Below the pieces are notes generated by a model. That model saw only the letters and a program-made list of their open reading frames with translations, did not search any database and was not told the DNA's origin. A DNA stretch of 64,000 bases from Octopus bimaculoides. Its lineage: Eukaryota. The position numbers and the translations under genes are program-made. The stretch lies in NCBI RefSeq assembly GCF_001194135.2, contig NC_068990.1:7013950-7077949 (forward strand), written 5' to 3'. Positions 16,138 through 61,598 of this stretch are shown piece after piece (position 1 is the stretch's first letter; every line of letters begins with the position of its first letter).

Positions 16138-16181
16138 CTACCACCCATGCTCATTCTGGCCTTAGTAAAACGCCATCAAAG
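16138..16181 (+). CDS. Candidate upstream dynein exon (44 nt, phase 1 to 0): (A)[14 protein letters not shown]
   Basis: Strong acceptor tttctcttttcag, donor AAG|gtagga, open frame, and a phase-0 end that fits the 18936 exon. No homology support. Confidence 0.45.
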
Positions 16182-18270: not shown

Positions 18271-19242
18271 CGTATAGTAACATCGTTTTTGGAGAAAGAA
18301 CCGGTTTCGTATTTTCTTTTCAAATTTCTCAAATTTCTTTACCTCTATTGTGTCATGTCTTTGCTATGTTGTGAATTATGGCGCTCCAGACAGGTGAAGG
18401 TAATCAGGAATTTTTTCCAGTATAAGGGAGATAATCAAAAATGTTGGGAATGATTAAGTTTTAAGTATAGGCTATGGCTTGGTCACCTTTATAAAGTTGT
18501 ACAGGAAATAATCATACCCAAAGACTGGTGTAGTAGCATCAAAGCCAAATGCTTCGAGGGTAAAAGAGATATGCCTCAGAGAGAAGTAGTCACAGAAATA
18601 TCTAATTACTGGACCAGATCATCAAAGTTACTGAATGAGTTATAGCTCAATAAATTAGAAAGCTTAAATTAGATGCAGTTCCAAATATTTACTTGTATAC
18701 CACCGTAAAACAATTCTTTATATCATAGTCTAAAATTAAGTCTTTCCTTTTGTAATCTGCTCCATACGATGGTCAAAATTTCAGTTAATAGAATAATTGT
18801 AATTCAATCAATATTAACAAATCAGTTACTAAGATGTCCTACATCTATAATTTGTTTCTGTAGTCAACAGATAACATTCTGAATACATGAGTATTATCTG
18901 CTTCTGAGAAGATTTGTATTCTGATTTCATTTCAGCTCCTCCGGAAAAACATGCTTATGCTAGAAGAAGCCAAGAAGGAGTTAGAAAAACAGCTGCAAGC
19001 AGTTAAAGAAGAAAGGAAAATATCTGTAAGTCTACTTCCTTCGCCTGTAGTTATTTTTGTGAATGCTGTTTTGTTACATTCTGAGTTTAAATCCCGCTGG
19101 CGTCATCTTTGCCTTTCACCCCTGATTGATTTTGTTACCAGTTTAGTCCTGGAGCCAATGTCATTGACTAACTCCTTCCTGCAAAATTACAGGCCTTTTG
19201 CTGAAATTAAAAATAGATCTTTATTTTCAAGTCACTATAGTA

Positions 19243-25200: not shown

Positions 25201-27651
25201 ATGAGAAAAATAGAGAGATGAATAAGTAAATAAAGGAAGAAAAAAGACTAAATTAAGGACACAGATTTGCTGAATCCAGATTGATTTGAAGCTAGACTAC
25301 AAAGAAGTTATAATTATGTCCAGCAGTAGAGCATTAATGAAAGGGAACAGGAATATTCTGTGCTTATAAAGATTCTATGAGCAAACTGGTTGTTCAGTAT
25401 TCTTCTCCGCCATCTCCCTCCAAAAGGAAAGGAATATTCTGAGAAACTGAAATGTAATCTGATACTATTTATTAGAAGAAGACATAACTTGCCTCTAATA
25501 CTGTATTGTCCAGAAATAATTAATTTTATTTTATTTTCAGATTGACTCAAAATATCGGTACTTTTTCAGCTTGGTAAGTTTTAAATTACTCTTTTGTACA
25601 AATTTAAATGACATTTGAACCCCCACTCTCTCTCTCTATTTGTCATTCTACTTCTGTCTTCATCTTTCAGTCTGTCTCTCTATTTCTTTCATTTACACAT
25701 GCACATGTGTGTGCATGCACACACACATACATTTATTTATGTAGCACAGAACCAAGGAAACTGGTGATGTGCATCATCAAGTGTCATGCTTATTAGTAAA
25801 AGTTAATATTCTGTTGGGAGTAGAGTTTTTTTTTTTTATGTTTCGGACAAAGCCTTTCTTTAGGATTTGAGATACAAGAAAAAACAAAAAGAAAAGAAAG
25901 CTGGAAGTCGCAAGAGAGAGAAATATAAGAGAAGCAGAAAGAAAGAAAAGGCAAGGAAAAGAGAGACAAATTAAAGTGCAAGAGAAAGATGAAGAGAAAG
26001 ATGAAGAGAAAGATGAAGAGAAACATTGTTAGAACGAAGTGGAGAGAAAATTAGAAAGGCGAGCTAAAGGATAAAGTAGTAGTCATTATACTAAGAAGAG
26101 TGCAGAAGTGAAATGAGAACTGCTTAATTAGACCAAATGAAACCAATCAGTGCTGTGTTCCTTAGGCTGAATGTGGCACTTTTTTTTCTCTTTTTGTTTT
26201 TTTAATTTCTTTGTCTTTTAGTATATGAATCCATAGTGTGTAGAAATGCTGGACACTGATAAATGGTTAATGAATTGGCCCCTTGAGTTGAAGTGACTGG
26301 CCTGGGATACATAGTAGAATACAATGAATGTGCTTGTGAAAGCCAACTGCAAAGTGACAGCCTGTTTCATTAATATAAAGAGTACCACAAAATTGACAAT
26401 TGATACTGTAGATGATCTTGGTAGATGTGTTGTGGAAGCATTTCCTATGAAGTTATATAATGTAACTTGGGGCTGGTGATAGTTCTGACACTAATGATAT
26501 AGAGCTAAGTGTTGCACTGCAGTAAATGTAATTAGATGTGCTGGGTGTTGTGTGGCTAAGGACCGAGAGCTTCTAAGGGGTTGTGAAGATTCTTAACTTT
26601 CTTAAAGGCAAGGAGAGATGATAGGGAAAAGATGAGTGATTGGGTCAAAGAGTAGGATGTGGAAGTTGTGGGTGAGTGTTTCAATGAGAAGATGGATGCG
26701 GTGAAGGAAAGTAGAGTCAGGTCAGATGAAGGAAAATAGAGTCAGGTCAGATGAAGGAAAGTAGAGTCAGGTCAGATGAAGGAAAATAGAGTCAGGTCAG
26801 ATGAAGGAAAGTAGAGTCAGGTCAGATGAAGGAAAGTAGAGTCAGGTCAGATGAAGGAAAGTAGAGTCAGGTCAGATGAAGGAAAATAGAGTCAGGTCAG
26901 TAAGTGTGCACAGAAAGAGTAGGAGAATAGTGGCACAGTTTATGGTCTGGTCCCAGTTGAGTACAGGATTCATCACTTATCAAGGGTACTCCTCACTTAA
27001 GGAAGAAATGTCACATTTTTTGGAACTGAATCGATGCTACAAATTCAACAAAGATGGAAGAATTAGGAGAAAGGTATAGCAGGTCTGGTGTATTTGGGGT
27101 GAGGCACAAGACCCAAGCCACCTCATGTTGCACTGTATAGTCATTTTGATCCTTGATAAATAGCAAACAATCCATGAAGCAAGTAGAGTATATGTGTATA
27201 TATATATATATTAATAGGACTTGAGTGTATATTTAAAGATATAAAAGAAACATTAGACAAAACAACAACTTAGATTAGTTGTATTTGCTGTGACTCAAGA
27301 AGGTCTGAGTATGTTTTTTCTAATATGTTTATCAAATTAAGAATTGATTAAAAATTTGTAATGCTACCTGAAAAATAAGTATGACGTCAAAAAAAAAGAC
27401 AAAGTAAATTGGAGATAAAAAAATAAGAGGGTAAGATGTTTATGATAAATAGAAAGTGTACAGAAATGCGAGAAATATATTTATGAAAAAAGTAAGGAAG
27501 AGCAGTGATAGAAATGATAGTAGGGACTAGGGTACAGAAAGGCTCAACAGGCTGACTTTGGGAAAGAGCGAGTTGACACGAAAAGGTACCGCCTCTCTGT
27601 GAGCTGGAAAATAGGAGACTGCTGTATCCCCATATACCCACCATTTATATC

Positions 27652-30532: not shown

Positions 30533-33500
30533 GGTGTGGACAGTATTTGAGGACGTGTATTTTTAGTCATTATTCTGTTTGACTAGCTTTTATTGAACTT
30601 CTATCTCAGAAAATAACAATGACAGGCCCTATGCTCACTAATTAAATGTAAAGGCATGTTGGGATTGTGGCTTTGAAGGCTAAGCTTGGTGATTTAGAAA
30701 CTTCTCATTTTCTGAAAGTTACATAATCTTTTGTACACAAAATCTGGTGTGAGTTAGAGAAGGAAGATGGAAGCATATTAGCTGTATCAGAATGTACAAA
30801 ACATTCCAAATGTTCTGATTCCTTCAGGACGTTAAGCCAAACCAGCACAGGGACCCAGTCAGGTGGCTCTGGCAGCGACCCATGTATGAATAGTGCTTAT
30901 TGTGTGCCACCAGCACTGGTATTGGTCACAACTACAATTTCCATTTGATTGTGATGTGATTTGATTTTGATTTTGATCTTGGTTTACTTGACTCAATATG
31001 TCTCCTCAAGCATGGTATACATGTTTATTAATATAAAATGACATAGAAATAGAATATATTCCATATATCAGCTTAATATAACAATCCCTCCTTCCAAGTG
31101 CAATTGGGATTTACAAAACAAAATTAGGATCAAGTCAAATTTGACAGGAAAGGAGGTGTAGTCAGAAGGGTCAGCTATATTGCATTGTTGATACCTTTTT
31201 CATTGAATTGTAAATAAAACTAAAACAAGAATTCAAGGTGAATTGAACTGAAAATGTAGTGGGAGAAAATTAAATGCTTAAATTTGATGATTTCTTATTT
31301 TCACCGCACTTTAGATTAGTTAAGCCTAATTAAGTACATTCAATCAAAAAAAATTCATTTATTAAGTATTTTCTTAAGTGCTAGATGCTTCTGCTTGGTT
31401 AACAAGTGCTGTGAAGACTATGAATTTTAAGTTCAATTTGTGAAGGAAGTTGCATATTCAAATTACATTAACATAATACTTTATCAGTACCAGGCAAAAT
31501 AAAATTTTCTCTGATCCAACTATATCGACTGTTTGCATTGATATTTGAAGCACAAATTAAAAAAAAAAACATAACTTAGCAGAGTTTATCAATTTTTATC
31601 TCAGAACAGTTTTACTCTAGTTTAACTGTATTTTTAATGTGAATACTAGCAACATAGACATTTTAATTTAATGATAACAAGATTTATGATTTGAAATGGT
31701 AATATCTTTTTAAATCATTTAAACTAGAAATTTAAAGAAATCAGTAAAAGCTACAAAATTACAAACAGAAAAGAAAATATAGTTTCTAAGGTACATATAT
31801 GTGTCTGTGTCTATGTATATCTATTTATATAATTCAATCTATCAGGTTTGAATATCTAGTCAGTTTATTTTGGAATTATAGTAATGATATTGAAATTAAA
31901 GATTACTGGAAATCTTTCAATTGTGAAACAAATTTACTTCTTTATTAATGTTAATTATGCTGAATTAAGAGTAAATTAGCTGTCTGAGCATGAAACTAGA
32001 AACAAATTATGTTCATTAAGATAATTTAAAAACATATCTTATGAATGAAAATATTCTCAGGTTAACACTTCTTTGATATGAAAACTATTTTAAAGTTTTG
32101 TCAATGATAGTCCAACACATTTTAAATATCCTCAATACAAATAATCTGAAATGCAATGCCCAGTTAATTGTAATTGGTTAATAAAATCAGTCTTGCATAA
32201 CTTACACATAATTACCTGCTGCAAATATTAGATAAGCACCTTTAGAAATCTTTTACTTGTTTCCCAGACCCCAGTCAAACTGTCCAACCCATGCTAGCGT
32301 GGAAAACGGACGTTAAACGATGATGATGATGATGGTTTCTCTATGAAAGCATGTAAATCAGCATCAGTATGATTTTTAATTTGATGGCATGAAATTTTAC
32401 ATAATGCTATTGTTATAATTTTTCTAATTTCAGTAGAAATACAGTTATACCATTTTATAGGAAGTCTGCACCCTTAGAAAATGTATATTAAAGAGTTTAT
32501 GTTGAAGATACTTTATATTAATGTATATATTTTTCATTTTCGCTTTCTTTTATTCAGATAGCAGAAGTATTGAATTTGGAGACAGAATTTATTGAGAATT
32601 GTGTTGTTGCTGATGAAAAGGTATTTTCTTATTTTGATGTCAGACACACAACTAATATATTTGTAATTTCATTGAATCAAGCATTAACTATTACTCACAA
32701 CTCAAATCCTATTCCCATCAAAGTGTAATCCATCAGAAGTCAAGTTGGCAGCCAAATTCAATCCTATCAGAATATGTTTGGTAATTTAGTCTGCTCAATA
32801 GCCTGAGCTGTTTGGCTGCCAGCTCTGCTCAGTAATCTAGCAAACTCAACACCTTAATCTGTTCAGTGACCTATTCTGCTTAGCAACTTAATCAGTTCAG
32901 CAAGTGACTCTGCTTAACCACCATATTTGTTCAGCAAGTGAGTGACTGGCAACGTATTCTGCTTGATAATCTATTCTGACCAGCAATTTACTCTGTCTAG
33001 TAACCTTGTCTGATCAATGAGTCAGACCAATATTTAAATCTGATCAGTTACTAATTACATGAACTGATAGACTGCGCAAGTATTATTAGAATTGCATTAG
33101 CAAAGACAGATTGGCATCAGTTTTGTCCTAATATCACATCATTCACTTGAGAAAGGCATGAACATTACACATCTTCAGCTGTATTTCCTGTTAAAATAAC
33201 AGAAGGTTATAATGAAAATTATTAACTATTATGAATTATTTATTCAATGCAAGTTTGATCAATTTTCATTTTAACATACATGAGGAAGTACAGGCTAGGA
33301 TAATATATACAGTATCAAAGAGACATCTTATTGTATATGTTGAGTTCAAATCTGGTTAGGATTAACAAAATAAACTTATTTTATTCAACTAATTAAACCT
33401 CCTTAAGATACTAATTTTATAAGAACAAAATTTGTGGCTACTAGATGAAGGCATGTAAACCAATACTTCAGCATAATTTTAAACTTTGATTCTATAAAGT

Positions 33501-38150: not shown

Positions 38151-41100
38151 AAATACATAACAAACAAAAATCAATATCAATGTTACCTCAAATATTAATT
38201 TTGCACACACACAAGCATATATAAACACGTGTATGTGTGTGTACATTTGTGTGCATGTATAGGAGGGAGTGCTGAAAAGTTCTTGGCTTTTGGGTAAAAA
38301 AAAATAAAGGAGGATCAGTTATGATTTTATTCAACATATTCCTCTCTCAGATTCAAACACTTATTGTAACAGTCCTTCAGTTTTTCTAAGCCCTGTAAAA
38401 AAAACTTGGAAGATTGGGCCTCCAGTCAGGCCTTTGCAGTACCCTTAAAGCCAGGACATTTTCAGCACCCCCTTGTATGTGTTTGTATATAGGATTGTTC
38501 CTCTAAAATACAATGATATTGCTTTAATTCTCTTTTCTAGTTTCATTTGATAAAAAGTTTTCTTGCACCCAAAGGGAACAAAAAACTGTTATTCTTCTAC
38601 CAAGACCAACCCAAGGTAAGTACTAAGTGAAAATTTATTTACCATATTTACCTGTGTATAAGTCACACTATTTTATACTTGATTTTAGCTACCAAAAACT
38701 GTGATGCAACTTATACATGGGGCAAAGCTAAAACTTTGGTTGTATGCATCCTACTTTCCTGCTAATCAGGTTATTTATGATCATTACTACCTTGTGCCAT
38801 GTTCAGTTGAACTACAAACAACTTATTTTATTCCACTTAAATTTTATTAGATTAATACCCATGTATTTTTGATAACACAAATCGCATCTTATAAATCATT
38901 TATCTTATCAATTGTCATTATATAATATTGAGACAACTAACGTTGCTTGAGATGTCAGAGTTCCAATGAATGAAGAGCTTCAGGTGCTACTATTTTGAAT
39001 AAATTACTGTTGATATCAATGTATGAAAATGGTTACTGGCAAAATTGGTCTTTGAATTATGCTGAATATTCTAATAATTAGCTGTGATAACTTTCTCAAT
39101 TCAACAACTAGTTCTATAAAGGAGAAAGTTTTCTTTGGGTGATAGCTTTGTCATAATGGCTATTGTTGGTGTTGAGAGAAAAGGTTCTTCATGCAATGCA
39201 AATTTCAAGCTCCAGGTCTGAGTTGAATGGTGACAGAGCTGATGAAAGGGCATTTACAGTTTCAGAACTGCTTGTAAGAGATTGGTGAAAACAAAAGGAA
39301 GTTACACTAAAAATGCCTAAAAGAGCAGGCAAAAGGAAACAAACCCACCATCCAGAGACTGAGAAACAAAAAATAAAATGGATAAAAAGCTGAAGGAACT
39401 GAAGGAGTACTGGTTTCATCATGGCTTTACTGCAGATTTGTCCAGATGCCTGCCCAGATTAACACAGATTCTTCATTCAAGGCTTTGTATGGATTTATGA
39501 AAAGAAATGGACTCAGTCACTGACAGAAAACAAAGATATGTCAGACACTGCCTCGTGACTTAGATATTTACCTTCCACATGTTTTCCCTCAAGTAAAGAA
39601 AACAATCTGATTTTGAAGTTAGCCAGATAAGTAATATTGTTGAAATGCCTTTGCACTTTAATCTACCTGCAACTGCCCAGAGGAAAGAAGACTATACTAG
39701 TATGCAAAAAAAGGCCTCAAAAGGACCTATTTCACAGTATTGCTTGGATGTATGGCTATTTGGTACTAAGCTAAACCCAATACCGATATTTAATAAGGAA
39801 ATCACTGCAAATGTGAAAAAGTTAGCAACTGGAGTAGGAGTGCATTGTCATCCCAATGGGTGGATGGATGAAGACAGCATGGAAATCTAGTTAGCTAAAA
39901 TGTGGAATGCGAAACCTGATACATTTCTAAAGAGGAAAGTTCTACTTCTATGGGGCCATTTCTGTGCTCACAAGGCGGAGAAGGTGGTTTTACATCCTTG
40001 TTACAGCCCTTGGATGTGGTGTTGAACAAACTATGTAAAGATAGAGTATCAGAAATGGACGATGTTGATGGCTCCAGATGAGCAACAATTGACAGAGGCA
40101 AGCAAACTCAAGGATGCAAGTTCAAAGGTGAAGAGTGCCTGGGATGTTATTCCATGTAATATGGTCAATAAAAATTGTTCTCTCAATACAAGAATATTTA
40201 ACAAGATGGAAGGAACAGAGAATAATTGTCTTTGGGAGTACAACGAAGACCAAGATGGTGACCAACTGACATTTCTACTCCATACTGGGAGATGAGGAAA
40301 TTACAGAGAAGGACTTGAATAAACATTTTGGTCACAGCGATGAAGATATCAGTTTTGAAGAATTTTAATTGGTTTTAATTGATTTTAATATATGATATGG
40401 TTATTTGAAATTGATATTTTCTTGATTTTAATTTGAGTTTTAATGTAGTTTTACTTGACTCAGAATTATTGAATTTTATTTGATATTCAATTTTTATATT
40501 TTGTTGTGCATTTCCTTGTTTTCTAGTTGTAGCTTGCATAGCAATTTTATTTCCTTGTTTTCCATTTTACAAACAATATTATTGTTTGTAATTAAGTTTG
40601 TATGTCAATAAATGTGTTTTAACATGGCTGTTTATTTTGTTGACACATGAAAGGTTAATTATTATCATCAGTTATAATTGCAAGTTTGAATATGAAAAGA
40701 AAAGAAATCTGTGCCAAAGATTTAGCAGTAAATTAAGGGTGTGACACATGTAAATATGGTAGTTATTCTTCAGTATTCAATTTACAGATACTATTGTCAA
40801 TATCAAATATAAAGTTTATATTTATTCTAGACTGGAATTCATTTCTGGGGTTATGTCTATGATTAGTATAATAATATATTTGTTTACTAAGCAGTTCAAA
40901 TAAATATCATCATCATCATCATCGTTTAACGTCCGCTTTCCATGCTAGCATGGGTTGGACGATTTTACATATTTACTTAAAGATTTTCTCATCACTATTT
41001 TGGTAAGTATGGTGATTTCCTGATGAGGTGATAAGCCTAGAACATGTTCAAATTGTAGTTTGTATTTTCCAAAATAATTAAGAGAATATTAGTTGTAAGC

Positions 41101-44100
41101 TAATATTTGTTTTGTCTCACTGCTTAATTATTTCTAATTAGTTTTCCTAATGCTTCTGCATTAATTAGTTGAATACTTGAAAGAGTATGGATGACTGTTT
41201 TAATAGGGTACTGGATAACCATTTGAGAAGTTGACAATCCATATTCTGTCACTGCACTCTTGTTTGTGGTAATTTGAACTCTTCATTTCAAATTACCCTA
41301 TCCATGTAGCTGTCAATAAGTATAATGTTAGGCAGAACTAGTTTTTGCATTATAAAATTTTTTTTTTTTTGTATGCAATGCTGAATTCTGTATTAGCTTT
41401 GCGATTGTGGCTAATATGCATTAAATAAAAATAAAACCTGAATAGTAGCATGAAGATAGTAGGAATTATATCAATAGATTGGCCCTGTTGTTAGAATCAG
41501 GAGTATAGGAGAAAAGAATTAATAGATTAAATATATTTGAATTAGTCCTGTAAGTTTGTTTCATTGATCCCTTCTCATAAATGCGTTAATAAATCTACCT
41601 AAATTTATAGAATTGATTTATTTAATCAAACTGTTTCTGATGCATATAAAATACCTCCTTTTCATATTCAGAAAATATAAGTTTAACTTTTTATAAACAA
41701 AAGCGTATTTTCAATTGTGAAGTAATTCAGAGCCATTTCTAATATGGATTTATATGATTCATTTTGGAAAGTATGGAGTAATAAAAATTTAGTTATTGAA
41801 TTGGCAAAATATTTAGCACTATCTTCTACTTTTAATCTTGACATATTGACTGGAGGAAAATAGTTTTGATATTTAAAAGCTAAGGTGATGTGCTGAGTTC
41901 CTAGCAAAGGCAAATACCTCTTGACATGCTAGTTGACCTAACTACAAATATGTAACATGAAGCAGTAAGCTCATGCTCAAGGTGGTGATGGTTTCTCAGT
42001 AAATGTTAAGTCTTTCATTGAATTCAAATGCTCCCATTAATAAAACCTGTTTCTATTTAGTATAGAAAATATCTTCTAAGTGCTTTGAAACGAAGAGTAA
42101 GTTCAAAATACATTTTACGCTATGATTCTCAGAGACGGTCATAAAAATAGATCTTGGTCCTATACAACAACTCAGACTTGTCTTTTCTTTACCAATTCTA
42201 GAAATTGACTGAACAACAGGAATGTCAAGCAAACAAGTGAGCCTCCTTGTCATCAATCATCCACAAAAGATAGCAGTAAAATCTTCCTCTAACAACCTGC
42301 CATCTAAAAAAATTATTTACAGTATATAATGTAGGCTTTGATATACAATGGCAAAAAAAAATATAATAATAATGGGAGGGTAAGGCTGAGGCACATTTGG
42401 TCATATGTTTGCTGGATCAGGTTTATTCAAAGACCAAACAACAAAAACTAAAAGAAAGGAATGAGAAATTTCCATTGGCAAAATCATTTGTACATTTTGT
42501 TTCTAATTTTCAAAGATCATACAGACAAAACATTGCAGGACTGTGAAAAATAACAACATAGAAAAATGGTTGTCAAAATGAAAATAACACTGTTGATACT
42601 TATATGCAGCAGGTCTGGGATTGTCAATGGATGTCATAGGAGGAGAGACAGAGAGGGAAAGAGGTGGGGGTCATGAAATATAATTAGAGTCTTTGCATCC
42701 GAAAAATGTAAATTGTATTGAGATGTAGCTATCATTTGCATTGCTTTTCAGACGGATATGCCAGGAGACAAAACTGCTGGTGGTAAAGGTGCAAAGCAGT
42801 TTTTTATGGCTACAGCAACTGAAGAGGTTTGGCTCAATTTCAATTTCGTTTTATCTTGCAAATTCCTTAAAATGTAATCTCTACATCAGGCTTGGACAAC
42901 CTTTTTTGAGAAACAGGCTGCATGAGACATGCCTCATCATCAGGTGGATGGTACTGCTAAAAAAGGGAAGGTAATGTTTCATTAGGTGTGCCATTCAGAA
43001 ACTCCTGCAGGCTTCAGGTTACCCATGGCCGCCTTATGAGCTTTAGTACTATGGTACAATATCTAATCTACTATGGTACAATATCTAATCTACTAAAGGC
43101 AGTTGTTTTATGAGAGAAAAATTTAAGTGACATAGCAAAGAACCTGTGTCTACATTTTCATAGTTAGGCTAAATGTATGTTTACAAAAACCATACACTTG
43201 TAGGGTTACTGAAGATTATTTATGCACACACACATGTATGTGTGCATATGTATGTATACATTATTTAAGGAATTGGAAACTATCTCATTGAAAATTGGAC
43301 ATATTGCAAGAGCCAGAGATATCCCTTAACAAGAAAACTGACTTTCTATTGCTGCAGGCAAGGCTCTCTACTGGTTAACATTAAACTAAAAAATTTTATC
43401 CTACATATACCAACTGCCTACAACTGTACATGTGTACATGAGATCTGAACTATTTTTCTGCTTCAAAAACGTACTAATTCCCAATTTTTTTTTGGTTGCT
43501 AGTATCTTCCATAAACTTTTACAGATACTTCTATAAACCTTCTATAATCTTTCACAATCTTACATAGATAGAAAATGGGTGTAGAAGATAAATTTTTTAC
43601 CTTTTGGGTCTAGAATTTCTTTTGGTTGAAAAAAAAAAAAAGGAAAGAAAAAAAATGACAATGAAAATTGCTTTTGTCAAAATTCATCAGCAGGTAAGCC
43701 AAAAACCATCTTGATCCAAATTTTAACAACAGTAATGTTTTGCATATTATTTTTTCTGAAACTCATTTTTTTCTCACATTTTTCTCCCTAAATTCCTTAT
43801 TTTTCAGGTGTGGAGTGATTGAATTATAATATGGTTTTATTTTCATTTGTACTTTTTTATATACATTTCAACTAGGTATGCTCTATAAGTATCATGCTTA
43901 GACAGCATCAACTGCAACCAGATATTCTCAATTCTTGACTGATAGTCACTTCAAAATTCTTCAAGTTGAATTTCATATCTATTCTAGTAGAAGCTGTATG
44001 AAAACCTTTCTGTTCACCATCGGTGTTATAGAAAATAATTTGATAATCAGCTACAAGTTGTATATCTGAGGTTGAATATTTCCAAAAGACATCTTGCTTT

Positions 44101-46612
44101 CTTGGGAAATGGTGTAGAAGCTGAACCAAGAAACTGATATCCATCTTTCAGTTGTTCTGTGACAATCAAAAACACCATTGCACATGTTTTTTCGACCTCA
44201 CAAACTACTACACAGAGATCAATAATTTTAGCAGTGCATGTTTTAGATATGTCTTTTACAGACGGTGTTGATTGCATGATTTCTTTGTACGACAAGAATT
44301 GAAGATGGTGATGATACTGAAGCTATTTTTCCATTACTGCTTCTCAGCAGTAATGGAATATTTTCCATTCTTTCTTCAAATGTGATCTTTATTAACTCAA
44401 AAAGTTCTGCTGTTTCTTGTCATTCAATGAGATGAGTGCATCCTTAGCATGACAGTTATGTCTCCATAATTTTATCATTAATTTCATTTCTTATTAAGAG
44501 GATGTATACTTATCCATCCATTGTTATTCAAGGACTATCAGCATGATTTACAGGTTCGCAAGAGTAAAATTGCACTCCCATTACTTAATTAATTATCTCT
44601 TCAATTTAAGGCAGGTGAGCTGGCAGAATCATTAGCATGCCAGGTGAAATGCTTAGTGATATTTCGCCTGTCTTTATGTTCTGAGTTCAAAGTCCACCAA
44701 GGTCGGCTTTGCCTTTCATCCTTTTGAGGTTGATAAATTAACTACCAGTTGCATACTGGAGTCAATATAATCGACTGGCCCCCTCCCCCAAAATTTTGGG
44801 CTTGTTTCTAGAGTACAAAAGAATTAACTGTTCAATTTGTTTTTCTTGTAAAGTTTTCTGATCCTCTCTATGAATAATTGATGAATCTTTGTTGTGAGAG
44901 ATATAAGAAATTTTAATGACAATTTCAATAAAACTATGTCATTTCTAATATTTTATGACTTAAATTATTTTTTTAAAAATATCATAACAACTACAAGGTG
45001 ACTGAATTTTATCAAAGGTCTTTCAACATTTATATATTCAGTGAACATTACATTGATAGTCAAACGACAACTTCTAACAACTTTGAATACAACTTCTACA
45101 ATATGAAATTTCACTTGTAGAATTCTGAAGTGAATACCAGCAAAGAAGAGATAGAATGTAGTTGTAGTGAGTTGTCAGGGCATGATAGTTTAAGTGTATT
45201 CCTAGTTAAAATGTATATAAAATATTTAAAAAGATACAATTAAAAATAAAACCATAAAAATCTTCCCACACCATCCCCACCACCTTCAAAAGGAATTTAG
45301 GGGAAAAATGGATGTCATAGGAGGAGAGATAGAGTGGGAGAGAGATGGTGGGTAATCAGGAAATGTAATTAGAATCTTTGTATCTGAAAAATGTAAATTG
45401 TATTGAGACATACTGAAATATCATTTGCACTGTTTTTCAGACGGAAATACCAGGAGACAAAACTGGTGCTGGTGGTAAAGGTGCAAAACAGTTTTTGATA
45501 ACAACAGGAAATGATGAGGTTTGGTTTAATTTCAGTTTTGTTTTATCTTGCAAATTATTTAGAATGTAACCTCTACATCAAACTTGAGCAACCTTTCTTG
45601 AGAAGCAGGCTGCATAAGACATGCAAATAGAGAGAATATGCAGAACCCTTGCTCTTGCCATAACATTCAACACTTCCTCAATAAATTTTACTGTATCACC
45701 TGAGGATTTTATTTATCTGCACCTTTGATGAAATCATATTCTCTGCATTGTAATGCTTCCTGCTACATTTTTACACATCAATCACAATACTTTCTTCACC
45801 AGTTTTCTTTCCAGCTTATCAATATTTACATTTGAATACAACAATGTAACCTTTCAATGCTTTAGTATTTCCACTTAAATCTGAAAGATTTTCTTAATTT
45901 ATGTAGTATTAAATTCCCAGAAAGGTACTCTGCATTCACTTCACTTTGTCAATTGACAGTGGGGAAGAAATTATTATGCAATGTCCTCCATCCCCACCCA
46001 AACACCAAAAACTAAAAAAGGTAAAAGAACTCATTCTTTACACTCAAACAATCAAGTTAATGCATTCTTTGACAGTATCATCTTTGACAGGGAAAAAGGG
46101 AAACCATCCCACCGTTTAAATGGGAATAAATATTACCTCCCAATGAATGAAAATTGAGCTTTGCACATCAACCAATAAACAATCAAAGGAGCTGTAAAAA
46201 CAGTGTTACTCAAAAGAAGACAACTGAGTGATCAAAAGTGTTTTTCTCACTTTTGTGAAACTTTAAGTAATGTAATTCTGAGTCAGTTTATTAACACAAT
46301 ATAGATATGTATGTATATATATATATCGTTGAAAGCACCGGTTCTCGTCCGATCACCAAAGTTAACCAACATCGAGCTTAGTTAGTACTTAGATGAGTGA
46401 CCGCTTGGGAAACCTAGGTGCTGTAAGCATCCAATTTTAAATGGCGGTGCCCAAGCATGACCACAGCTCATGAGCTGAAACCAGATAAAATGAAAATGAA
46501 TATATAGGAGTTACGACGCAAAAACGTATATATTTAAATGATATATTTTGGTGATGATTTTTTGAGTTAGCTTACCAATTATTTTTGTTGGTAGTTAATT
46601 TATAATATATTG

Positions 46613-46654
<42 letters not shown>

Positions 46655-47999
46655 TAGGTTGAGGAAAAAGTTTGTGTGCCGTGTTAAAATAATGATTTTT
46701 TTATGCAAGAAATTATAAAAAAACAACAAAAACTATTCTTCAAAATAAAGACCATCATTTTCTCCGCCAACGATCTGCAAGCTTTTGGATTTGGTCAAAG
46801 TACCAATTCCAGAACTTCCACACCATCCCAGTTCTTCAATCTTGTCACTAGTCTTTCTGGCAGAATGCGGCTTTGCATTGTCTTGTTGAAACAAGGAGCG
46901 TTTTTGATGAACACAGTGAGTCACCATTGAACATGACATGAACTGAATAAACACACACACACCACAAAATGTATAAAAGAGCATTATTTTAACATGGCGC
47001 ACAAACTTTTACCTCAACTTGATATATATATAGAAATTAAATATTGCGGGTAGCAATTAGTATTATTAATTAATATTAATTTACACCAGTGGCTAGCATA
47101 CATAAATATCCAAGGACTATGATTTATATTACATATATAAATAAGAGGAATAGCTACCATTCATCTAGCATATTAGGAATCCACCTTGGTGGCTATTCTC
47201 CTTATCTATCTATCTATCTATATATATGAAATTACATATAATTTATGATATTTTCTATCTTGCTTTATTCTTCTGATTAGCTATCAGCATATTTTGTAGT
47301 CATAATTATCATATTTCATTGAGCATATGTTGTTTCATTGCCATTTTTACATATTGCTTTTGTAATTATTAGGCTCTCACTGGAATATGTTGTGGTTTCA
47401 TACGCATTGGAGATAAGGCAATTACTGACGTCAATATTGGTATTGAAACAAATTTTCATGTTATTGATTGTAGTGAAACTGGAATATTAAAAACATTTGT
47501 AGAAAGGATTGATTATATGCTTGAAATATTGCAGGTAAGGATGATTATAGTGAAACTAATCTTTTGGATAAGATATTGGATAGAGGCATTAATAAACACA
47601 ACAATTAAGTTTAATCCACACAGCCATACACACACACACACACACAATGCATAAAATGCTTGGTACTGCCTGGAGTAAAAATGCCTGGATTAACGTTGTA
47701 GTGGTGAAACTGAGTCTGCAATAACTTGTTCTGATCCCGCCAGGCGAAATGCTTAGCGGTATTTCGTCTGTCTTTATGTTCTGAGTTCAAATTCCACTGA
47801 GGTTGACTTTGCCTTTTATCTTTTTGGGGTCGATAAATTAAATACTAGTTGCATCCTGGAGTCGATCTAATCGACTGGCCTCTTCACCCAAAATTTTGGG
47901 CCTTGTGTCTAGACTAGAAAAGAATAACTTGTTCTGATCCTAAAGAAATTGTGAACTACCCCAACTTTGGACTCAGTAACCCCTATAACATACACTCAC

Positions 48000-53890: not shown

Positions 53891-55573
53891 GGTAAATCTG
53901 TTTTCTCTTGAAGCACATCTGCATATTCCATTATTATAATCAATATGTATCCACAGTTGTTGCTGTATGTTAGTCAAAATACATATCAAAATTGAGAATT
54001 ATGGAAATGTGATTTGCAGAGTTATTCAATAACAAAACAAGGTGAAAATAAATAATACTGAAAAGTTTCCACTTTCCTGTTTTGTTGTAGATATATATAT
54101 ATACTCTTTTATTCTTTAACATGTTTCTGTCATTTGACTACGGCCATGCTGAAACACCACCTGAAAGAGTTTTAGTCAGAGAAATCAACCCCAGTTCTTG
54201 AATTTAGACATGTAGCGGGGTCCAAGCTGCTTTTCCAGTTGAGCCAGCTTTCCATATCACAAAGGCCGCACTTTCCACTGCCGTTGGTGTAGGGCTTACA
54301 CTTGGCTAAGATCTTCCAATGGATGTTGTAACTGACACCTTTATCTTTTAAAAACGATATATGACTGGATAATTTGGTTGTTTTCCATTTATCCCAGTGC
54401 CTGAAGTTCAAGGTGTGATTATTGAACCTGGCCTTGAAATTCTCCTCTGTAAGGGCCACGTATTTCTTTGTTGAAACCGTGTCCTTAGTGGATATAGAGT
54501 CCATGGTGATGGTCTCGGACATGCAAGCTCCATTTAGCGGGCACAAATTTTTATCCCTGCATGAACAGCTGATTTCATTTTGTGGTTTTTCTGTGTTGTG
54601 TGCGATAATATTTTTGAAATTAGTAGTTGAGCTGAAACTATGGTTGACTGGAAAGTGTCTATCTATCAATGCTAAGAAATACTTGCCTATATTAAAGGTC
54701 ACTTTGGGGGAGTAGTGGGGTGTGAACCAGATAATTTTCCTATTCCTATGTTTTCTTTTCTTTATTATTGGACTGGTGGCACGTGTATAGGTTATTGCCT
54801 TGCTAAATCCACTATCTTTTAGAGCCTTATTATATACTGGAGCAACGCTATTAAAAATGTCCTAAATTTTTAAACACTATGCGGGGGTGGCAGGAACCCA
54901 CATTAATATTACTAAGTCTATCGTTGGGCTTCCTATAAGGTTTATAAATATTCTTATTTAGATCTAAGGATACATCTAGGAAATTGACAACCGTCAGGTT
55001 GGTATCTGTAGCTATGCTAAGGCCGAAAGTTTCCATCAATTGGATAACGTCCTTCCTAAACTGATCCTGTGCTGGTCCATTGGTATTTGCGGTTAAAGCT
55101 AGGGCGTCATGTTTGTAAATGGCGAAATATACGTCAAGAAAAGTCTTGCCCAATGTATCAAGTAGAAATAGTCCAATAAGATCGCATATGCTTGCTCCAT
55201 CATATGACCCCATGCTCACATCGAAAGTACCGTCTGTATTGGTAGTCTTGATCCATTGTGTGTTCTCGCTGAAGAATAAAGTCTTTCTAGAATGGAAGAT
55301 GATGTTCTTATCTTGTGTACTGATTTCTATGAATTCTCTTGAGAAGGTGAGGGCTTTATCTAGCAGTTCCTTAGAGATAGAGGCATAAAAATTGACAATA
55401 TCGAATTGCATGAATCTCGCTTTATTCTTATTCTTAATGGCTTTAAACCAGTTGACGACTTCTATACTATTGGACCATTGTGCTAACCTAGTTGCATTCC
55501 TGACTTTTACATTGATTTTTCCTAAAATTTCTTTACTAATAATGCCAAGTTCTTATTTAGCTGGGTTAATAAA

Positions 55574-60946: not shown

Positions 60947-61598
60947 GAAAGAGGAGTCTATTATTAAACAGGGATAATTATTATTGTTATTGTTGCTGTT
61001 GTTGTTGTTGGCATTGACTCTTATAATGTTATGACTTCCTTTTTAATTTCCTTTCAAAACATTTTATTTCAAGCATTATCATATAAAATTTTCTTTGGAG
61101 TATTTGTAAAAAGAACTATAATCACTTTATCTTTTAGCATTCATGTTACTCTGTCGAATATAAATCTTATTTAATCATATTGCTTTGAATTAATCTCATC
61201 AATTATCTCATAGCTTTTTCATTTCAATGATATCATTAACTTTTAGTATAACATTTTAGTGTAGGTGTGAAAGGCCAAATGTGGCTGCTTTGAATATAAA
61301 ACAGGTAAAATATTTGGGTTGGATATTTGGATAAAATATTTGGGTTGTTTTAAATGCTAAGGAGTGCAAGAGGGCTTCCTTTGATAACTTTTTTCTTTGC
61401 AGTCTTTGAATACGCTCTATCCTGGCAACAAGTCAAGAATTAAAGATGAAGACATCTTGGAACAAATGCAGTTGAAACTTTATGCCAATAGCTTGTCACG
61501 AGCTGTCGTCACTCTTGAACAACGGTTAATTTTATCACTTACAGAAACCAAAGAACTACTGAAAGACATCTCCTTTCCACTTGATTGTAATACTGCAG
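16138..61598 (+). CDS. DNAH5: Multi-exon gene span (partial, N-terminal region): outer-arm axonemal dynein heavy chain, DNAH5/DNAH8-like
   Basis: AG/GT-bounded exons splice in frame to [141 protein letters not shown]...-SLNTLYPG.... This is colinear with the DNAH5 N-terminus as I recall it (LDARHNYLFAIVASCLDL...LMFYYQD...[18 protein letters not shown]). DNAH5 versus DNAH8 cannot be resolved here. Confidence 0.85.
16860..18103 (-). mobile_element. Tc1-family DNA transposon (DD34E-type), full span, frameshifted transposase
   Basis: TIRs caggggttggacaaaataatggaaa at both ends, flanked by TA. Transposase motif [13 protein letters not shown]...[14 protein letters not shown]. Confidence 0.9.
18136..18234. 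mobile_element. Extra Tc1 terminal fragment inverted against the end of the adjacent element
   Basis: Reverse complement of 18014-18103 across a (TA)n tract, with a few differences. Confidence 0.85.
18936..19025 (+). CDS. DNAH5: Dynein heavy chain exon (90 nt): [30 protein letters not shown]
   Basis: Acceptor atttcatttcag, donor TCT|gtaagt, coiled-coil-like peptide, in frame with the next exon. Confidence 0.8.
19295..19590 (+). mobile_element. tRNA-derived SINE
   Basis: gcacaggagtggct...cagtcccactgtgtggc...ggaaactgaaaagaa. Confidence 0.75.
19640..20745 (-). mobile_element. Decayed non-LTR retrotransposon RT, HERO/NeSL-like (restriction-like endonuclease group)
   Basis: [12 protein letters not shown]...ALEMYHVP...[13 protein letters not shown]...VRVFIDN...LRAGRK. 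Confidence 0.75.
22238..22945 (+). mobile_element. RTE LINE 3' end
   Basis: ORF 22249-22578 with [20 protein letters not shown]...[10 protein letters not shown]...DRDLW, then the 3' UTR and (GAT)n tail. Confidence 0.9.
23160..25265 (-). mobile_element. Rearranged Penelope-like element with long inverted arms (GIY-YIG C-terminus and 3' UTR in both orientations)
   Basis: About 23580-24125 is the reverse complement of about 24670-25265. The + arm encodes [11 protein letters not shown]...SSVLYQH...[11 protein letters not shown]...SLN. Confidence 0.7.
25541..25573 (+). CDS. DNAH5: Dynein heavy chain micro-exon (33 nt): [11 protein letters not shown]
   Basis: Acceptor ttttattttcag, donor TTG|gtaagt. 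Resembles DNAH5 LDARHNYLFAI. Confidence 0.85.
26240..27000 (-). mobile_element. Penelope-like element fragment (RT/EN linker and GIY-YIG)
   Basis: [16 protein letters not shown]...AFKKVKNL...[15 protein letters not shown]...ETG...SHFNSRG. Confidence 0.7.
26700..26899. repeat. 25-bp minisatellite, 8 copies
   Basis: Unit gatgaaggaaa(g/a)tagagtcaggtca. Confidence 0.95.
27973..28146. repeat. 15-bp minisatellite, about 11-12 copies, inside an RTE 3' UTR remnant
   Basis: Unit gctcctgcc(a/t)agccg, flanked by ctggtgcag and gtcaaactgtccaacccat. Confidence 0.95.
28670..29185 (+). mobile_element. RTE LINE 3' UTR with long (GAT)n tail
   Basis: Same 3' UTR as 12815, including the cttgcgaagacctgttg tandem module. 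Confidence 0.85.
29844..30286. repeat. Inverted repeat with arms of about 155 bp around a (TA)n core
   Basis: 29844-29999 is the diverged reverse complement of 30123-30286. Confidence 0.9.
30407..30421. promoter_or_regulatory. RFX X-box-like site GTTGCCATAGACAAC in a dynein intron
   Basis: Two half sites, GTTGCC and GACAAC, separated by 3 nt. Fits the relaxed X-box consensus and lies in non-repeat sequence of a cilia gene. Confidence 0.45.
30530..30835 (+). mobile_element. Tc1/mariner-superfamily 5' fragment (TIR and HTH region)
   Basis: ta|cagggtgtggac start in (TA)n; [22 protein letters not shown]...HSKCSD. Confidence 0.6.
32558..32620 (+). CDS. DNAH5: Dynein heavy chain exon (63 nt): [21 protein letters not shown]
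   Basis: Acceptor ctttcttttattcag, donor AAG|gtattt. Resembles DNAH5 [21 protein letters not shown]. Confidence 0.85.
35272..35490 (+). mobile_element. Short tRNA-type SINE
   Basis: gaactggcggaattgttagc...gagttcaaattctgccg...ccccgaaattg. Confidence 0.75.
35555..35895 (+). mobile_element. tRNA-derived SINE of a second family
   Basis: tRNA-like head gctcagtggttaaagtg...gagtttgattcc, then ttgagcaagacgctt...ctgtagaaatgag. Confidence 0.7.
36950..37800 (-). mobile_element. Decayed RTE (BovB-like) LINE C-terminal region
   Basis: LVYSSET*...[15 protein letters not shown]...QLQ*TGHLIHM, followed by a terminal CHFC...GLKQHLNIH zinc finger. Confidence 0.65.
38259..38477. mobile_element. Mariner-derived MITE
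   Basis: TIRs ggagggagtgctgaaaagttcttggcttt and aaagccaggacattttcagcacccccttg, with TA flanks. Confidence 0.8.
38541..38615 (+). CDS. DNAH5: Dynein heavy chain exon (75 nt): [25 protein letters not shown]
   Basis: Acceptor ttctcttttctag, donor AAG|gtaagt. LLFFYQD matches DNAH5 LMFYYQD. Confidence 0.9.
38642..40759 (+). mobile_element. pogo/Tigger-family DNA transposon (CENPB-HTH and DDE_1), decayed
   Basis: TIRs ccatatttac..gtcacac at both ends with TA flanks. Motifs [42 protein letters not shown]. Confidence 0.85.
42752..42826 (+). CDS. DNAH5: Duplicated dynein exon, copy A (75 nt): [25 protein letters not shown] (alternative exon or pseudoexon)
   Basis: Acceptor ttgcttttcag, donor GAG|gtttgg, open frame, phase 0-0. 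Paralogous to 45441-45518 including the flanks. Confidence 0.6.
44610..44825 (+). mobile_element. Short tRNA-type SINE
   Basis: ggcaggtgagctggcagaatcattagc...gagttcaaa. Confidence 0.8.
45441..45518 (+). CDS. DNAH5: Duplicated dynein exon, copy B (78 nt): [26 protein letters not shown]
   Basis: Acceptor tgtttttcag, donor GAG|gtttgg. FLITTGNDE resembles DNAH5 VFVTEGNDV. Confidence 0.85.
46327..46500 (+). mobile_element. 5S-rRNA-headed SINE-like element (5S-derived 46327-46429 plus SINE tail)
   Basis: cgttgaaagcaccggttctcgtccgatcacc...gttagtacttagatgagtgaccgcttgggaa...gtgctgtaagc is a 5'-truncated 5S rRNA copy. It is followed by ggcggtgcccaagcatgaccacag...ctgaaacc, which resembles the tRNA-SINE tail. 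Confidence 0.75.
46654..47022 (-). mobile_element. Internally deleted mariner element
   Basis: TIRs of about 40 bp (gttgagg.aaaagtttgtg.gcc.tgttaaaataatg) with TA flanks. Remnant [23 protein letters not shown]. Confidence 0.85.
47373..47534 (+). CDS. DNAH5: Dynein heavy chain exon (162 nt): [54 protein letters not shown]
   Basis: Acceptor taattattag, donor CAG|gtaagg. Resembles DNAH5 [23 protein letters not shown]...GGLL. Confidence 0.9.
47740..47925 (+). mobile_element. Short tRNA-type SINE (5' truncated)
   Basis: gcgaaatgcttagcggtatttcgtctg...gagttcaaattcc. Confidence 0.8.
48205..48670 (+). mobile_element. tRNA-derived SINE
   Basis: gagtggtaagaagtttgcttcccaacc...gtgctccagcatgg...gaaacaag. 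Confidence 0.8.
48730..49425 (+). mobile_element. Penelope-like 3' end: GIY-YIG C-terminus and terminal repeat with hammerhead-like motif
   Basis: [11 protein letters not shown] (frameshift in the A run) [34 protein letters not shown]...GAAA at 49316-49384. Confidence 0.75.
54190..55574 (-). mobile_element. Penelope-like retroelement, RT and GIY-YIG, 5' truncated and decayed
   Basis: LINPAK*ELG...[12 protein letters not shown]...[10 protein letters not shown]...[11 protein letters not shown], then [18 protein letters not shown]...[20 protein letters not shown]. Confidence 0.9.
55847..55873 (+). ncRNA. Minimal Penelope-type hammerhead-like motif
   Basis: CCGACGA-A-GGGC-UAC-GCCC-GAAA-CGUC, with palindromic ACGU helix III. 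U4 is C and stem I is weak. Confidence 0.55.
56430..56700 (-). mobile_element. Second Penelope-like GIY-YIG fragment
   Basis: [19 protein letters not shown]...SSFHKQL...[10 protein letters not shown]. Confidence 0.65.
57290..59735 (+). mobile_element. Tx1/L1-clade LINE ORF2 remnant with large internal deletion
   Basis: APE endonuclease FRLVTVYAP...[10 protein letters not shown]; RT start [15 protein letters not shown]...[10 protein letters not shown]; then directly the C-terminal region (WQCYRGALP...ETILH..IQC) and aataaa. Confidence 0.85.
59745..59960 (+). mobile_element. Short tRNA-type SINE
   Basis: agctggcagaatcattagc...gagttcaaattc. Confidence 0.75.
60480..60900 (-). mobile_element. 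RTE LINE 3' UTR remnants
   Basis: tttaacgatc...cagctggatgcccttcctaacaccaac, present twice. Confidence 0.65.
61403..61598 (+). CDS. DNAH5: Dynein heavy chain exon (196 nt, phase 0 to 1): [65 protein letters not shown]
   Basis: Acceptor tttttctttgcag, donor CAG|gtactt. Coincides with ORF 61397-61609 and is colinear with the DNAH5 segment [21 protein letters not shown]...KEPTDY. Confidence 0.8.

What the first reader, a model, noticed from the sequence alone, without database searches (positions are those of the whole stretch)
42626..45624. Tandemly duplicated, in-frame dynein heavy-chain exon: candidate alternative or mutually exclusive exon pair
Seen: a block of about 310 bp is duplicated (42626-42932 and 45307-45624). 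Each copy holds an AG/GT-bounded phase 0-0 exon with an open frame: A = [25 protein letters not shown] and B = [26 protein letters not shown]. The only indel in the exon is a clean 3-nt one, while the flanks carry other indels. Known: B keeps the DNAH5-like TGND motif. Inference: the gene may switch N-terminal variants, for example sperm flagella versus epithelial cilia. Caveats: most changes in A are non-synonymous, which also fits neutral decay. Including A, B or both keeps the frame, so NMD would not enforce exclusivity.
Basis: partly seen in the sequence, partly recalled or inferred. Interest (0 to 1): 0.85.

Follow-up and report, generated by a model that had tools for sequence, protein, structure and literature searches.

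The report
Young duplicated dynein exon, use unproven
A 0.3-kb piece of an octopus outer-arm dynein (DNAH5-like) gene, carrying one small coding exon, has recently been copied into the neighbouring intron; the extra copy still looks usable, but nothing here shows that the animal uses it, so it is an ordinary candidate, not a demonstrated exon switch.

Summary
Blocks 42626-42932 (A) and 45307-45624 (B) are the only two copies in the window (84% identity, E 2.5e-94). Each holds an AG/GT-bounded, phase 0-0 open exon of 75 or 78 nt. The gene is a DNAH5/DNAH8-type outer-arm dynein heavy chain, and the exon encodes a floppy loop plus one beta-strand of the N-terminal dimerization domain. B is ancestral: it matches Octopus vulgaris and the motif shared by other animals, and Argonauta hians has a single exon.

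Whether A is used could not be tested, because no cephalopod RNA or further octopus DNA was reachable. The sequence evidence is mixed and leans against an established switch:
- A differs from B as much as the flanking intron does (86.7% vs 87.5% identity).
- A lost two near-invariant residues and the best branch-site motif.
- An unselected copy would still look intact 31-55% of the time.
- No known exclusivity mechanism applies.

All eight replacements are conservative (P about 0.01), but an omnibus similarity test is null (P 0.25-0.45).

Verdict: a young, lineage-specific tandem exon duplication. A is most likely unselected and skipped or weakly included. A functional alternative exon remains possible (about 0.3). 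Interest is modest.

The parts
42626..42932 (+). Duplicated block, copy A (126 nt of upstream intron, exon A, 106 nt of downstream intron)
42752..42826 (+). Exon A, the derived copy. It is 75 nt, phase 0-0, open, and encodes [25 protein letters not shown]. It has an AG acceptor and a GT donor.
45307..45624 (+). Duplicated block, copy B (134 nt of upstream intron, exon B, 106 nt of downstream intron)
45441..45518 (+). Exon B, the ancestral-type copy. It is 78 nt, phase 0-0, and encodes [26 protein letters not shown]. It matches the O. vulgaris protein and the DNAH5 motif.
38541..38615 (+). Upstream constitutive exon ([25 protein letters not shown]), which encodes beta-strand KLLFFYQ
47373..47534 (+). 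Downstream constitutive exon ([11 protein letters not shown]...LEILQ), 162 nt, phase 0-0, donor CAG|gtaagg
16138..16181 (+). Earlier coding exon of the same gene (..[14 protein letters not shown]). The exon carrying the start codon was not located.
18936..19025 (+). Coding exon ([30 protein letters not shown])
25541..25573 (+). Coding exon ([11 protein letters not shown])
32558..32620 (+). Coding exon ([21 protein letters not shown])
61403..61598 (+). Next downstream coding exon ([24 protein letters not shown]...)
43777..43978 (.). Left arm of an inverted repeat in the A-B intron
45101..45310 (.). Right arm of the inverted repeat (72% complementary over 213 nt). It ends exactly where copy B begins.

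Best explanation
A recent, octopus-lineage-specific intragenic duplication copied about 0.31 kb into the upstream intron of a DNAH5/DNAH8-type outer-arm dynein heavy-chain gene. The copied unit is one 78-nt coding exon with 126-134 nt of upstream and 106 nt of downstream intron.

Exon B (45441-45518) is the ancestral exon and is presumably constitutive. It encodes a disordered Gly-rich loop plus beta-strand QFLIT and the following turn of the N-terminal dimerization domain.

Copy A (42752-42826) still has an open frame and the same splice-site dinucleotides. Since the duplication it has drifted at the intron's rate, so it is most likely an unselected by-product. It is probably skipped by the spliceosome or included only at a low level. 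If it is included, the likeliest product carries A and B together, as an in-frame 25-residue extension of a loop that already varies in length. It is a possible 'newborn' alternative exon, not an established mutually exclusive switch.

Shown: the duplication, the gene identity, the polarity (B ancestral), absence from Argonauta, and the lack of a rate difference between exon and flanks. Inferred: the splicing behaviour and the lack of function.
For: - **Rate.** Exon identity is 86.7% against 87.5% for the flanks (Fisher P 0.84). Eight differences are nonsynonymous and two are synonymous.
- **Omnibus test.** The A-B peptide similarity is what 10 random nucleotide changes would give (P 0.25-0.45).
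- **Polarity.** At 6 of the 8 replaced positions, and at the indel, B carries the O. vulgaris state, so the changes are in A.
- **Lost residues.** A lost a T/S and a G. Each is present in 14 of the 15 other sequences aligned, and the G is at least 90% conserved in the wider alignment.
- **Branch site.** A lost the best branch-site match (TACTGAA, branch A at -25 in B) through a 4-nt deletion. It also gained an upstream AG at -25.
- **Other species.** Argonauta hians has one exon between the orthologous neighbours and no second copy. The O. vulgaris model contains only a B-type exon.
- **Chance intactness.** A neutral simulation keeps the frame, the absence of stops and AG/GT in 31-55% of copies.
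- **No exclusivity mechanism.** The A-B intron is 2614 nt, both introns are GT-AG, and both exon lengths are divisible by 3. No docking or selector pairing stood out beyond purine/pyrimidine low-complexity matches.
- **Double inclusion tolerated in silico.** An AF2 model with A and B together keeps the fold and places A in the low-confidence loop.
- **Age of known functional pairs.** More than 90% of functional tandem-duplication exon pairs in human are older than 425 My (PMC8373072).
Against: - A meets every sequence criterion used to predict mutually exclusive exons: adjacency, length, frame, splice sites and homology (PMC3228551).
- In human, 21-38% of such intronic predictions were validated by junction reads (PMC5740500).
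- All 8 replacements score BLOSUM62 of 0 or more (P 0.004-0.02).
- The exon's transition:transversion ratio is 4:6 against 25:4 in the flanks (P 0.009). The joint P is 4e-5 under the flank spectrum. These are post hoc tests on 10 sites.
- The one exon indel is in frame.
- The splice sites are as good as those of B from -3 to +6, so some inclusion is plausible.
- No RNA data were examined.
Confidence: 0.55

Rival explanations
1. A is a functional homologous alternative exon that replaces B in some transcripts (mutually-exclusive-like use). It would swap one beta-strand and turn of the heavy chain's N-terminal dimerization domain ([10 protein letters not shown] to [10 protein letters not shown]) and give two outer-arm dynein tail variants from one gene.
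For: - All predictive criteria for such pairs are met (PMC3228551).
- A dynein heavy chain with such a pair is a published example (S. mansoni DHC1).
- Every replacement keeps the residue class.
- The substitution spectrum differs from the flanks.
- Seven of the 10 differences fall in the 23 nt that encode the structured strand and turn.
- The indel is in frame.
Against: - There is no slowdown relative to the intron, and the omnibus test is null.
- The clustering is not significant after a scan correction (P 0.58).
- Near-invariant G and T/S residues are lost.
- No exclusivity mechanism applies.
- The duplication is absent from Argonauta, and A is not in the O. vulgaris model.
- Most proven pairs are ancient.
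Confidence: 0.28
2. A is spliced in together with B, either constitutively or as a cassette. This would give a heavy chain with a tandemly repeated 25-26-residue segment that lengthens a disordered surface loop. Only the reading frame, not the residues, would then be under selection.
For: - The -3 to +6 donor and the acceptor are identical to those of B, and nothing enforces exclusivity.
- The near-neutral residue change combined with a preserved frame and an in-frame indel fits this reading.
- The loop varies in length between species: the exon encodes 18 aa in Argonauta, 26 aa here, and the region is longer in vertebrates.
- AF2 keeps the fold with A in the pLDDT<50 loop.
Against: - The O. 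vulgaris protein has one copy only, although the duplication may be younger than that species split.
- The best branch-site motif is lost in A.
- AF2 is insensitive to destabilisation.
Confidence: 0.12
3. The duplication is an assembly artefact, for example two haplotypes or a mis-join placed in tandem.
For: The window has nine N gaps, so it comes from a gapped scaffold assembly.
Against: - There is no gap between 22727 and 49426.
- The copies differ by about 13% plus indels, far above allelic divergence.
- They are separated by 2.4 kb of unrelated DNA that includes an inverted repeat and a SINE-like element.
Confidence: 0.03

Closest known systems
Tandem-exon-duplication-derived homologous (mutually exclusive) exons. 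Examples are the cytoplasmic dynein heavy chain DHC1 of Schistosoma mansoni, Drosophila Mhc, and the 236 human events catalogued in PMC8373072. The prediction criteria are in PMC3228551.
   Same: The two exons are adjacent and internal, of near-equal length and the same phase, with conserved splice sites and 68% identical residues. Part of the exon encodes a secondary-structure element of a folded domain.
   Different: - Usage is unknown.
- The pair is very young: its flanks are still 87% identical, Argonauta lacks it, and most proven pairs are hundreds of millions of years old.
- The exon is no better conserved than its flanks.
- Joint inclusion keeps the frame.
Intronic pseudo-exons, that is, relics of exon duplication
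   Same: A lies in an intron, diverges at the intronic rate, has lost conserved residues, and is absent from the one related annotation available.
   Different: A has none of the classical defects: no stop, no frameshift, and intact AG/GT. It cannot be called decayed. At this age, intactness is expected by chance in 31-55% of cases.
Vertebrate paralogue split of outer-arm heavy chains: DNAH5 and DNAH9 in epithelial cilia, DNAH8 and DNAH17 in sperm (PMC11779644)
   Same: This is the same protein family and the same region. The window's N-terminus matches both human respiratory DNAH5 (8j07) and a bovine sperm heavy chain (9fqr_I3). It would be a way to make two tail variants.
   Different: In vertebrates whole genes are duplicated. 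Here only one 25-residue exon is duplicated, and tissue specificity is pure conjecture.

Membership tests
Mutually exclusive exon cluster (criteria of Pillmann et al. 2011 and Hatje et al. 2017) | Neighbouring internal exons flanked by further exons | tested here: met
   The exon order is 38541-38615, A, B, 47373-47534.
Mutually exclusive exon cluster (criteria of Pillmann et al. 2011 and Hatje et al. 2017) | Similar length, same reading frame, conserved splice sites, sequence homology | tested here: met
   The exons are 75 and 78 nt, both phase 0-0, both AG/GT with identical -3 to +6 donors. Identity is 65/75 nt and 17/25 aa.
Mutually exclusive exon cluster (criteria of Pillmann et al. 2011 and Hatje et al. 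2017) | [quoted passage not shown] | not testable with these tools
   No cephalopod RNA-seq or cDNA was reachable. Protein and DNA searches found no A-containing product. One search also missed a known 88%-identical protein, so its negative result carries little weight.
Mutually exclusive exon cluster (criteria of Pillmann et al. 2011 and Hatje et al. 2017) | A mechanism that prevents joint inclusion: frameshift with NMD, an intron too short, U2/U12 incompatibility, or competing RNA pairing | tested here: not met
   Both lengths are divisible by 3, the A-B intron is 2614 nt, and both introns are GT-AG. The duplex scan found only low-complexity purine/pyrimidine pairing. Trans-acting regulation cannot be excluded.
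Mutually exclusive exon cluster (criteria of Pillmann et al. 2011 and Hatje et al. 2017) | The encoded segment is embedded in a secondary-structure element of a folded domain | tested here: inconclusive
   In the AF2 model the last third of the exon forms strand QFLIT plus a turn (pLDDT about 85). The first two thirds are a pLDDT<50 loop. The fold matches the DNAH5 N-terminus.
Conserved functional tandem-duplication exon substitution (PMC8373072) | Both homologous exons present and conserved across related species | tested here: not met
   Argonauta hians has a single exon. The O. vulgaris protein has a B-type exon only, and its DNA could not be fetched because the gene range exceeds 100 kb. 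Other octopods were not available.
Decayed pseudo-exon | In-frame stop, frameshift or lost splice site | tested here: not met
   A is open, its only indel is 3 nt, and AG and GT are present.
Decayed pseudo-exon | Evolves at the neutral (intronic) rate | tested here: met
   Exon identity is 86.7% against 87.5% for the flanks, P 0.84. The omnibus similarity test is null. Two post hoc pattern tests deviate.
Axonemal outer-arm dynein heavy chain, DNAH5/DNAH8 (gamma) type | N-terminal tail (dimerization domain) homologous in sequence and fold | tested here: met
   Human DNAH5 8j07 matches at E 9.4e-18 over residues 13-237, and bovine sperm heavy chain 9fqr_I3 at E 6.3e-12. Foldseek gives TMq 0.64-0.67, E 1e-13.
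Axonemal outer-arm dynein heavy chain, DNAH5/DNAH8 (gamma) type | DHC_N1/N2 tail, six AAA+ modules, stalk and C-terminal domain | not tested
   These parts lie outside the window. The O. vulgaris and A. hians orthologous models carry PF08385. The adjoining A. hians model carries the AAA domains.

The most novel reading that the evidence does not exclude
A is a newborn, lineage-specific alternative exon caught within a few per cent of divergence from its birth. It would replace, or add to, one beta-strand of the N-terminal dimerization domain of the outer-arm gamma heavy chain. An octopus would then make two outer-arm dynein tails from one gene, for example sperm versus epithelial cilia, which would parallel by splicing what vertebrates do with the DNAH5/DNAH8 gene pair.
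Probability: 0.15. Interest if true: 0.6.

Novelty: new member of a known kind. Interest (0 to 1): 0.3.

Why it matters
If A proves to be spliced and regulated, it would be a rare, datable example of an alternative exon at birth. Most known tandem-duplication exon pairs are hundreds of millions of years old. It would sit in a structurally mapped interface of the ciliary outer-arm motor and would suggest a splicing route to tissue-specific axonemal dyneins in an invertebrate.

If A is not used, which is the more likely outcome, it is simply a recent intronic duplicate. Its practical value is then for annotators, since gene predictors may wrongly include or swap it. Both related gene models seen here are already faulty around these exons.

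Tried and rejected
1. **Protein search with up+A+B+down.** It found no hits. It also missed the 88%-identical O. vulgaris protein found later, so the negative result is uninformative.
2. **O. vulgaris locus.** DNA was not delivered because the gene range is 124 kb.
3. **Two metagenome scans.** One used an A/B-common 29-mer and one an octopod-conserved 20-mer of the downstream exon. They gave nothing and one chance hit in a bacterial contig (L002).
4. **A 77-aa intronic ORF over block A used as a handle to other assemblies.** It found nothing.
5. **Human DNAH5 recalled from memory, used only as a tblastn lead.** It located only the 47373 exon. A hit at 58356 lies inside a retroelement ORF and was rejected.
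6. **Search for homology beyond the block edges.** None was found, so the original size and mechanism of the duplication stay open.
7. **Docking/selector RNA pairing.** The best duplex (43751-43790 with the start of both blocks) is polypyrimidine against polypurine with G-U pairs. It sits beside an ordinary inverted repeat, so it was rejected as a specific structure.
8. **Clustering of differences in the last 23 nt.** The nominal P is 0.019, but a scan-statistic permutation gives P 0.58.
9. **'All replacements conservative' and the ts:tv shift.** Both were kept as hints only, because the omnibus test is null and the tests were chosen after seeing the data.
10. **ORFs on either strand of 42.3-45.9 kb.** Nothing gene-like was seen.
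Full report
**1. The observation**

blastn of each block with 300-nt margins against all 64 kb returns one partner. 42626-42932 matches 45307-45624 at 83.6% identity over 318 columns, E 2.5e-94 (families D1, D4 and D5; MAFFT alignment). Homology ends sharply on both sides, and sensitive local alignments of the neighbouring DNA score no better than shuffled sequence. The nearest assembly gaps are at 22718-22727 and 49426-49680, so both copies and the 2.4 kb between them lie in contiguous sequence.

Each block contains an open, phase 0-0 exon:
- A is 42752-42826, 75 nt, [25 protein letters not shown].
- B is 45441-45518, 78 nt, [26 protein letters not shown].

The acceptors are ...gcttttcag|ACGGA and ...gtttttcag|ACGGA. 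The donors are GAG|gtttgg in both.

**2. The gene**

The neighbouring exons joined through B match residues 71-163 of human DNAH5 (PDB 8j07), E 1.3e-8, with TEGND opposite TTGND.

An exhaustive profile-free search returned an Octopus vulgaris protein and an Argonauta hians protein. The O. vulgaris protein (P0001) is 88% identical over the 105 residues. It comes from assembly GCA_951406725.2 and carries Pfam DHC_N1. The A. hians protein is P0005.

Using these as guides, I placed nine exons of the gene's 5' part on the + strand:
- 16138-16181
- 18936-19025
- 25541-25573
- 32558-32620
- 38541-38615
- A
- B
- 47373-47534
- 61403-61598

All are AG/GT-bounded and give one open frame. The first coding exon was not found. 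The 248-residue product matches human DNAH5 residues 13-237 (E 9.4e-18) and a bovine sperm axonemal heavy chain (9fqr_I3, E 6.3e-12).

An AlphaFold2 model has mean pLDDT 75.8. It superposes on the DNAH5 N-terminus (TMq 0.64-0.67, E 1e-13) and, more weakly, on the cytoplasmic dynein N-terminal dimerization domain 5owo. In the model, the first 14 or so residues encoded by exon B form a pLDDT<50 loop. The last third forms beta-strand QFLIT and the turn TGNDEALTG, which leads into strand ICCGFIR.

**3. Which copy is ancestral, and how old the duplication is**

O. vulgaris has [26 protein letters not shown], that is, B-type. At 6 of the 8 positions where A and B differ in residue, and at the one-codon indel, B carries the O. 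vulgaris state. The other two positions are ambiguous.

Across 15 other sequences the motif is [LVF][FLM][ILV][TS]xGxxE. The T/S is present in 14 of 15 and the G in 14 of 15. A has Ala at both positions. The G is at least 90% conserved in the wider alignment.

In the A. hians locus L001 the orthologous neighbours lie at about 12636-12701 and 14069-14224. There is a single 54-nt exon at 13384-13437 (TETGRRIKTLTLSDGKDE; ttttcag|AC...GATGAG|gtttt) and no second copy. So the duplication arose after the Argonauta/Octopus split.

A and B share Ile/Met (a C-to-T change at codon position 2) where O. vulgaris and Argonauta have Thr. This hints that the duplication is younger than the split from O. vulgaris, or that the 5' part of the exon was homogenised. 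O. vulgaris DNA could not be fetched because the gene range is 124 kb.

**4. Is A under selection?**

*Rate.* Ungapped identity is 88.9% for the upstream flank, 86.7% for the exon (65/75) and 85.8% for the downstream flank. Exon against flanks gives Fisher P 0.84. Of the 10 exon differences, 8 are nonsynonymous. A shows no slowdown.

*Intactness.* I simulated neutral change of a B-like ancestor at the flank-derived rate. AG/GT, an open frame and the reading register all survived in 55% of runs when half the divergence was assigned to A, and in 31% when all of it was. Looking intact is therefore not evidence of use.

*Pattern.* Three features deviate from the neutral expectation:
- All 8 replacements score 0 or more in BLOSUM62 (E/D, I/M, L/F, I/M, T/A, G/A, N/T, D/E). 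P is 0.004-0.02 under random nonsynonymous mutation.
- Transitions:transversions are 4:6 in the exon against 25:4 in the flanks (P 0.0086). The joint P is 4e-5 under the flank spectrum.
- Seven of the 10 differences lie in the last 23 nt, which encode the structured strand and turn (nominal P 0.019).

However, a window-scan permutation gives P 0.58 for that clustering. The one omnibus statistic asks whether the A-B peptide similarity is higher than 10 randomly placed nucleotide changes would give. It is null (P 0.25-0.45), because the conservative replacements are offset by their number.

I therefore treat the pattern tests as post hoc hints, not as proof of constraint.

**5. Splicing logic**

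The introns are 4136 nt (upstream exon to A), 2614 nt (A to B) and 1854 nt (B to downstream exon). All are GT-AG, and A and B are both multiples of three. Steric hindrance, U2/U12 incompatibility and frameshift-NMD therefore cannot enforce exclusivity.

A duplex scan of the whole pre-mRNA interval against the four conserved flanks found no site that pairs specifically with homologous positions of both copies. The top hit is polypyrimidine against polypurine beside an inverted repeat.

The best branch-site match upstream of B is TACTGAA, with the branch A at -25. It resembles the Argonauta TTCTAAT. It is destroyed in A by a 4-nt deletion and substitutions, and A gained an AG at -25. This heuristic suggests a weaker acceptor for A.

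If A is recognised at all, the default product carries A and B together. An AF2 model of that isoform keeps the fold (pLDDT 74.6, pTM 0.62). It leaves residues 110-140, which include most of A, as a low-confidence loop and uses B's strand. This is a weak, in-silico indication that double inclusion would be tolerated.

**6. Surroundings**

The 2.4 kb between the copies holds an inverted repeat, 43777-43978 against 45101-45310 (72% over 213 nt). Its right arm ends exactly at the start of copy B. A SINE-like element lies at 44602-44833, with five more copies in the window. No gene-like ORF lies on either strand. The only Rfam hit in the window is a 5S rRNA-like sequence at 46313-46429, in the B-to-downstream-exon intron. 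How the 0.31-kb unit was duplicated remains open. It could be a tandem duplication followed by insertions, or a short dispersed copy.

**7. Comparison with what is known**

Tandem exon duplication that yields homologous, often mutually exclusive, exons is a well-described class. The published predictor uses exactly the features seen here, and it lists a dynein heavy chain (S. mansoni DHC1) as a test case (PMC3228551).

In human, 1,722 such intronic exons were predicted, and 654 (one junction read) or 358 (three reads) were validated. That gives a prior of about 20-40% for transcript-level use (PMC5740500). Curated functional pairs are overwhelmingly ancient: more than 90% are older than 425 My (PMC8373072).

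Vertebrates make sperm-specific and cilia-specific outer arms with whole-gene paralogues. DNAH8 and DNAH17 replace DNAH5 and DNAH9 in sperm (PMC11779644).

**8. Verdict**

The duplication and the gene assignment are confirmed, and the functional reading is untested. I weigh the hypotheses as follows:
- 0.55: A is an unselected young duplicate, skipped or weakly included.
- 0.28: A is a functional substituting exon.
- 0.12: A and B are included together.
- 0.03: the duplication is an artefact.

This is a new member of a known kind, of modest interest until junction reads or other octopod genomes are examined.

Noticed in passing
window 46313-46429 (+): There is a full-length match to 5S rRNA (RF00001, 69.8 bits against a gathering score of 38) inside the dynein intron between exon B and the next exon. 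Its 5' helix is replaced by (TA)n, and microsatellites flank it. It is probably a dispersed 5S pseudogene or the head of a 5S-derived SINE. It is the only Rfam hit in the 64 kb.
   Followed up: partly
window 43777-43978 and 45101-45310: This is an inverted repeat of about 210 nt (72% complementary) enclosing 1.1 kb. Its right arm ends exactly at the left edge of copy B. It could be a foldback or TIR element, or it could be linked to how the duplication arose. In the pre-mRNA it could form a long hairpin in the A-B intron.
   Followed up: partly
window 44602-44833; also 47739-47934, 35276-35451, 59757-59910 (+) and 5920-6049, 6626-6804 (-): A SINE-like interspersed repeat family (73-86% identity) has six copies in the window. 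One copy lies between A and B, and one lies just after the downstream exon.
   Followed up: no
window 40906-40968; copies at about 13463, 22883, 29095, 32274 (-) and 14773, 16251 (+): A short repeat of about 63 nt is up to 98% identical between copies, which suggests a young MITE or SINE fragment family.
   Followed up: no
window 57260-58900 (+), 54175-55552 (-), 8638-9240 (-): Long intronic ORFs have retroelement (endonuclease/reverse-transcriptase-like) and transposase-like sequences. One gave a spurious weak hit to the dynein query.
   Followed up: no
window 42758-42760 and 42806-42808 (exon A): Both Ile-to-Met changes in A (ATA to ATG) create in-frame ATG codons that B lacks. This is probably a coincidence. 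It would matter only if transcription could start in the upstream intron.
   Followed up: no
P0001 (O. vulgaris) and P0005 / L001 12636-12701, 13384-13437 (A. hians): Both public gene models are faulty in this region. The O. vulgaris model jumps from ...LEILQ to a much later part of the tail and ends early. The A. hians model skips two exons that are present and intact in its own DNA, and it splits the dynein into two genes.
   Followed up: partly
PDB 9fqr chain I3: A 4730-residue chain of the bovine sperm doublet structure is labelled 'Cilia and flagella associated protein 57'. It aligns as a dynein heavy-chain N-terminus (E 6.3e-12), so the label in the copy searched looks mismatched.
   Followed up: no
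L001 12716-13010 and 13460-13510: The Argonauta introns on both sides of the single orthologous exon are filled with long (CAT)n-type microsatellites.
   Followed up: no
The word-indexed protein search with a 130-aa query returned nothing. The database nonetheless holds an 88%-identical O. vulgaris protein that the exhaustive search found. Negative results from short queries in that tool should not be trusted.
   Followed up: yes
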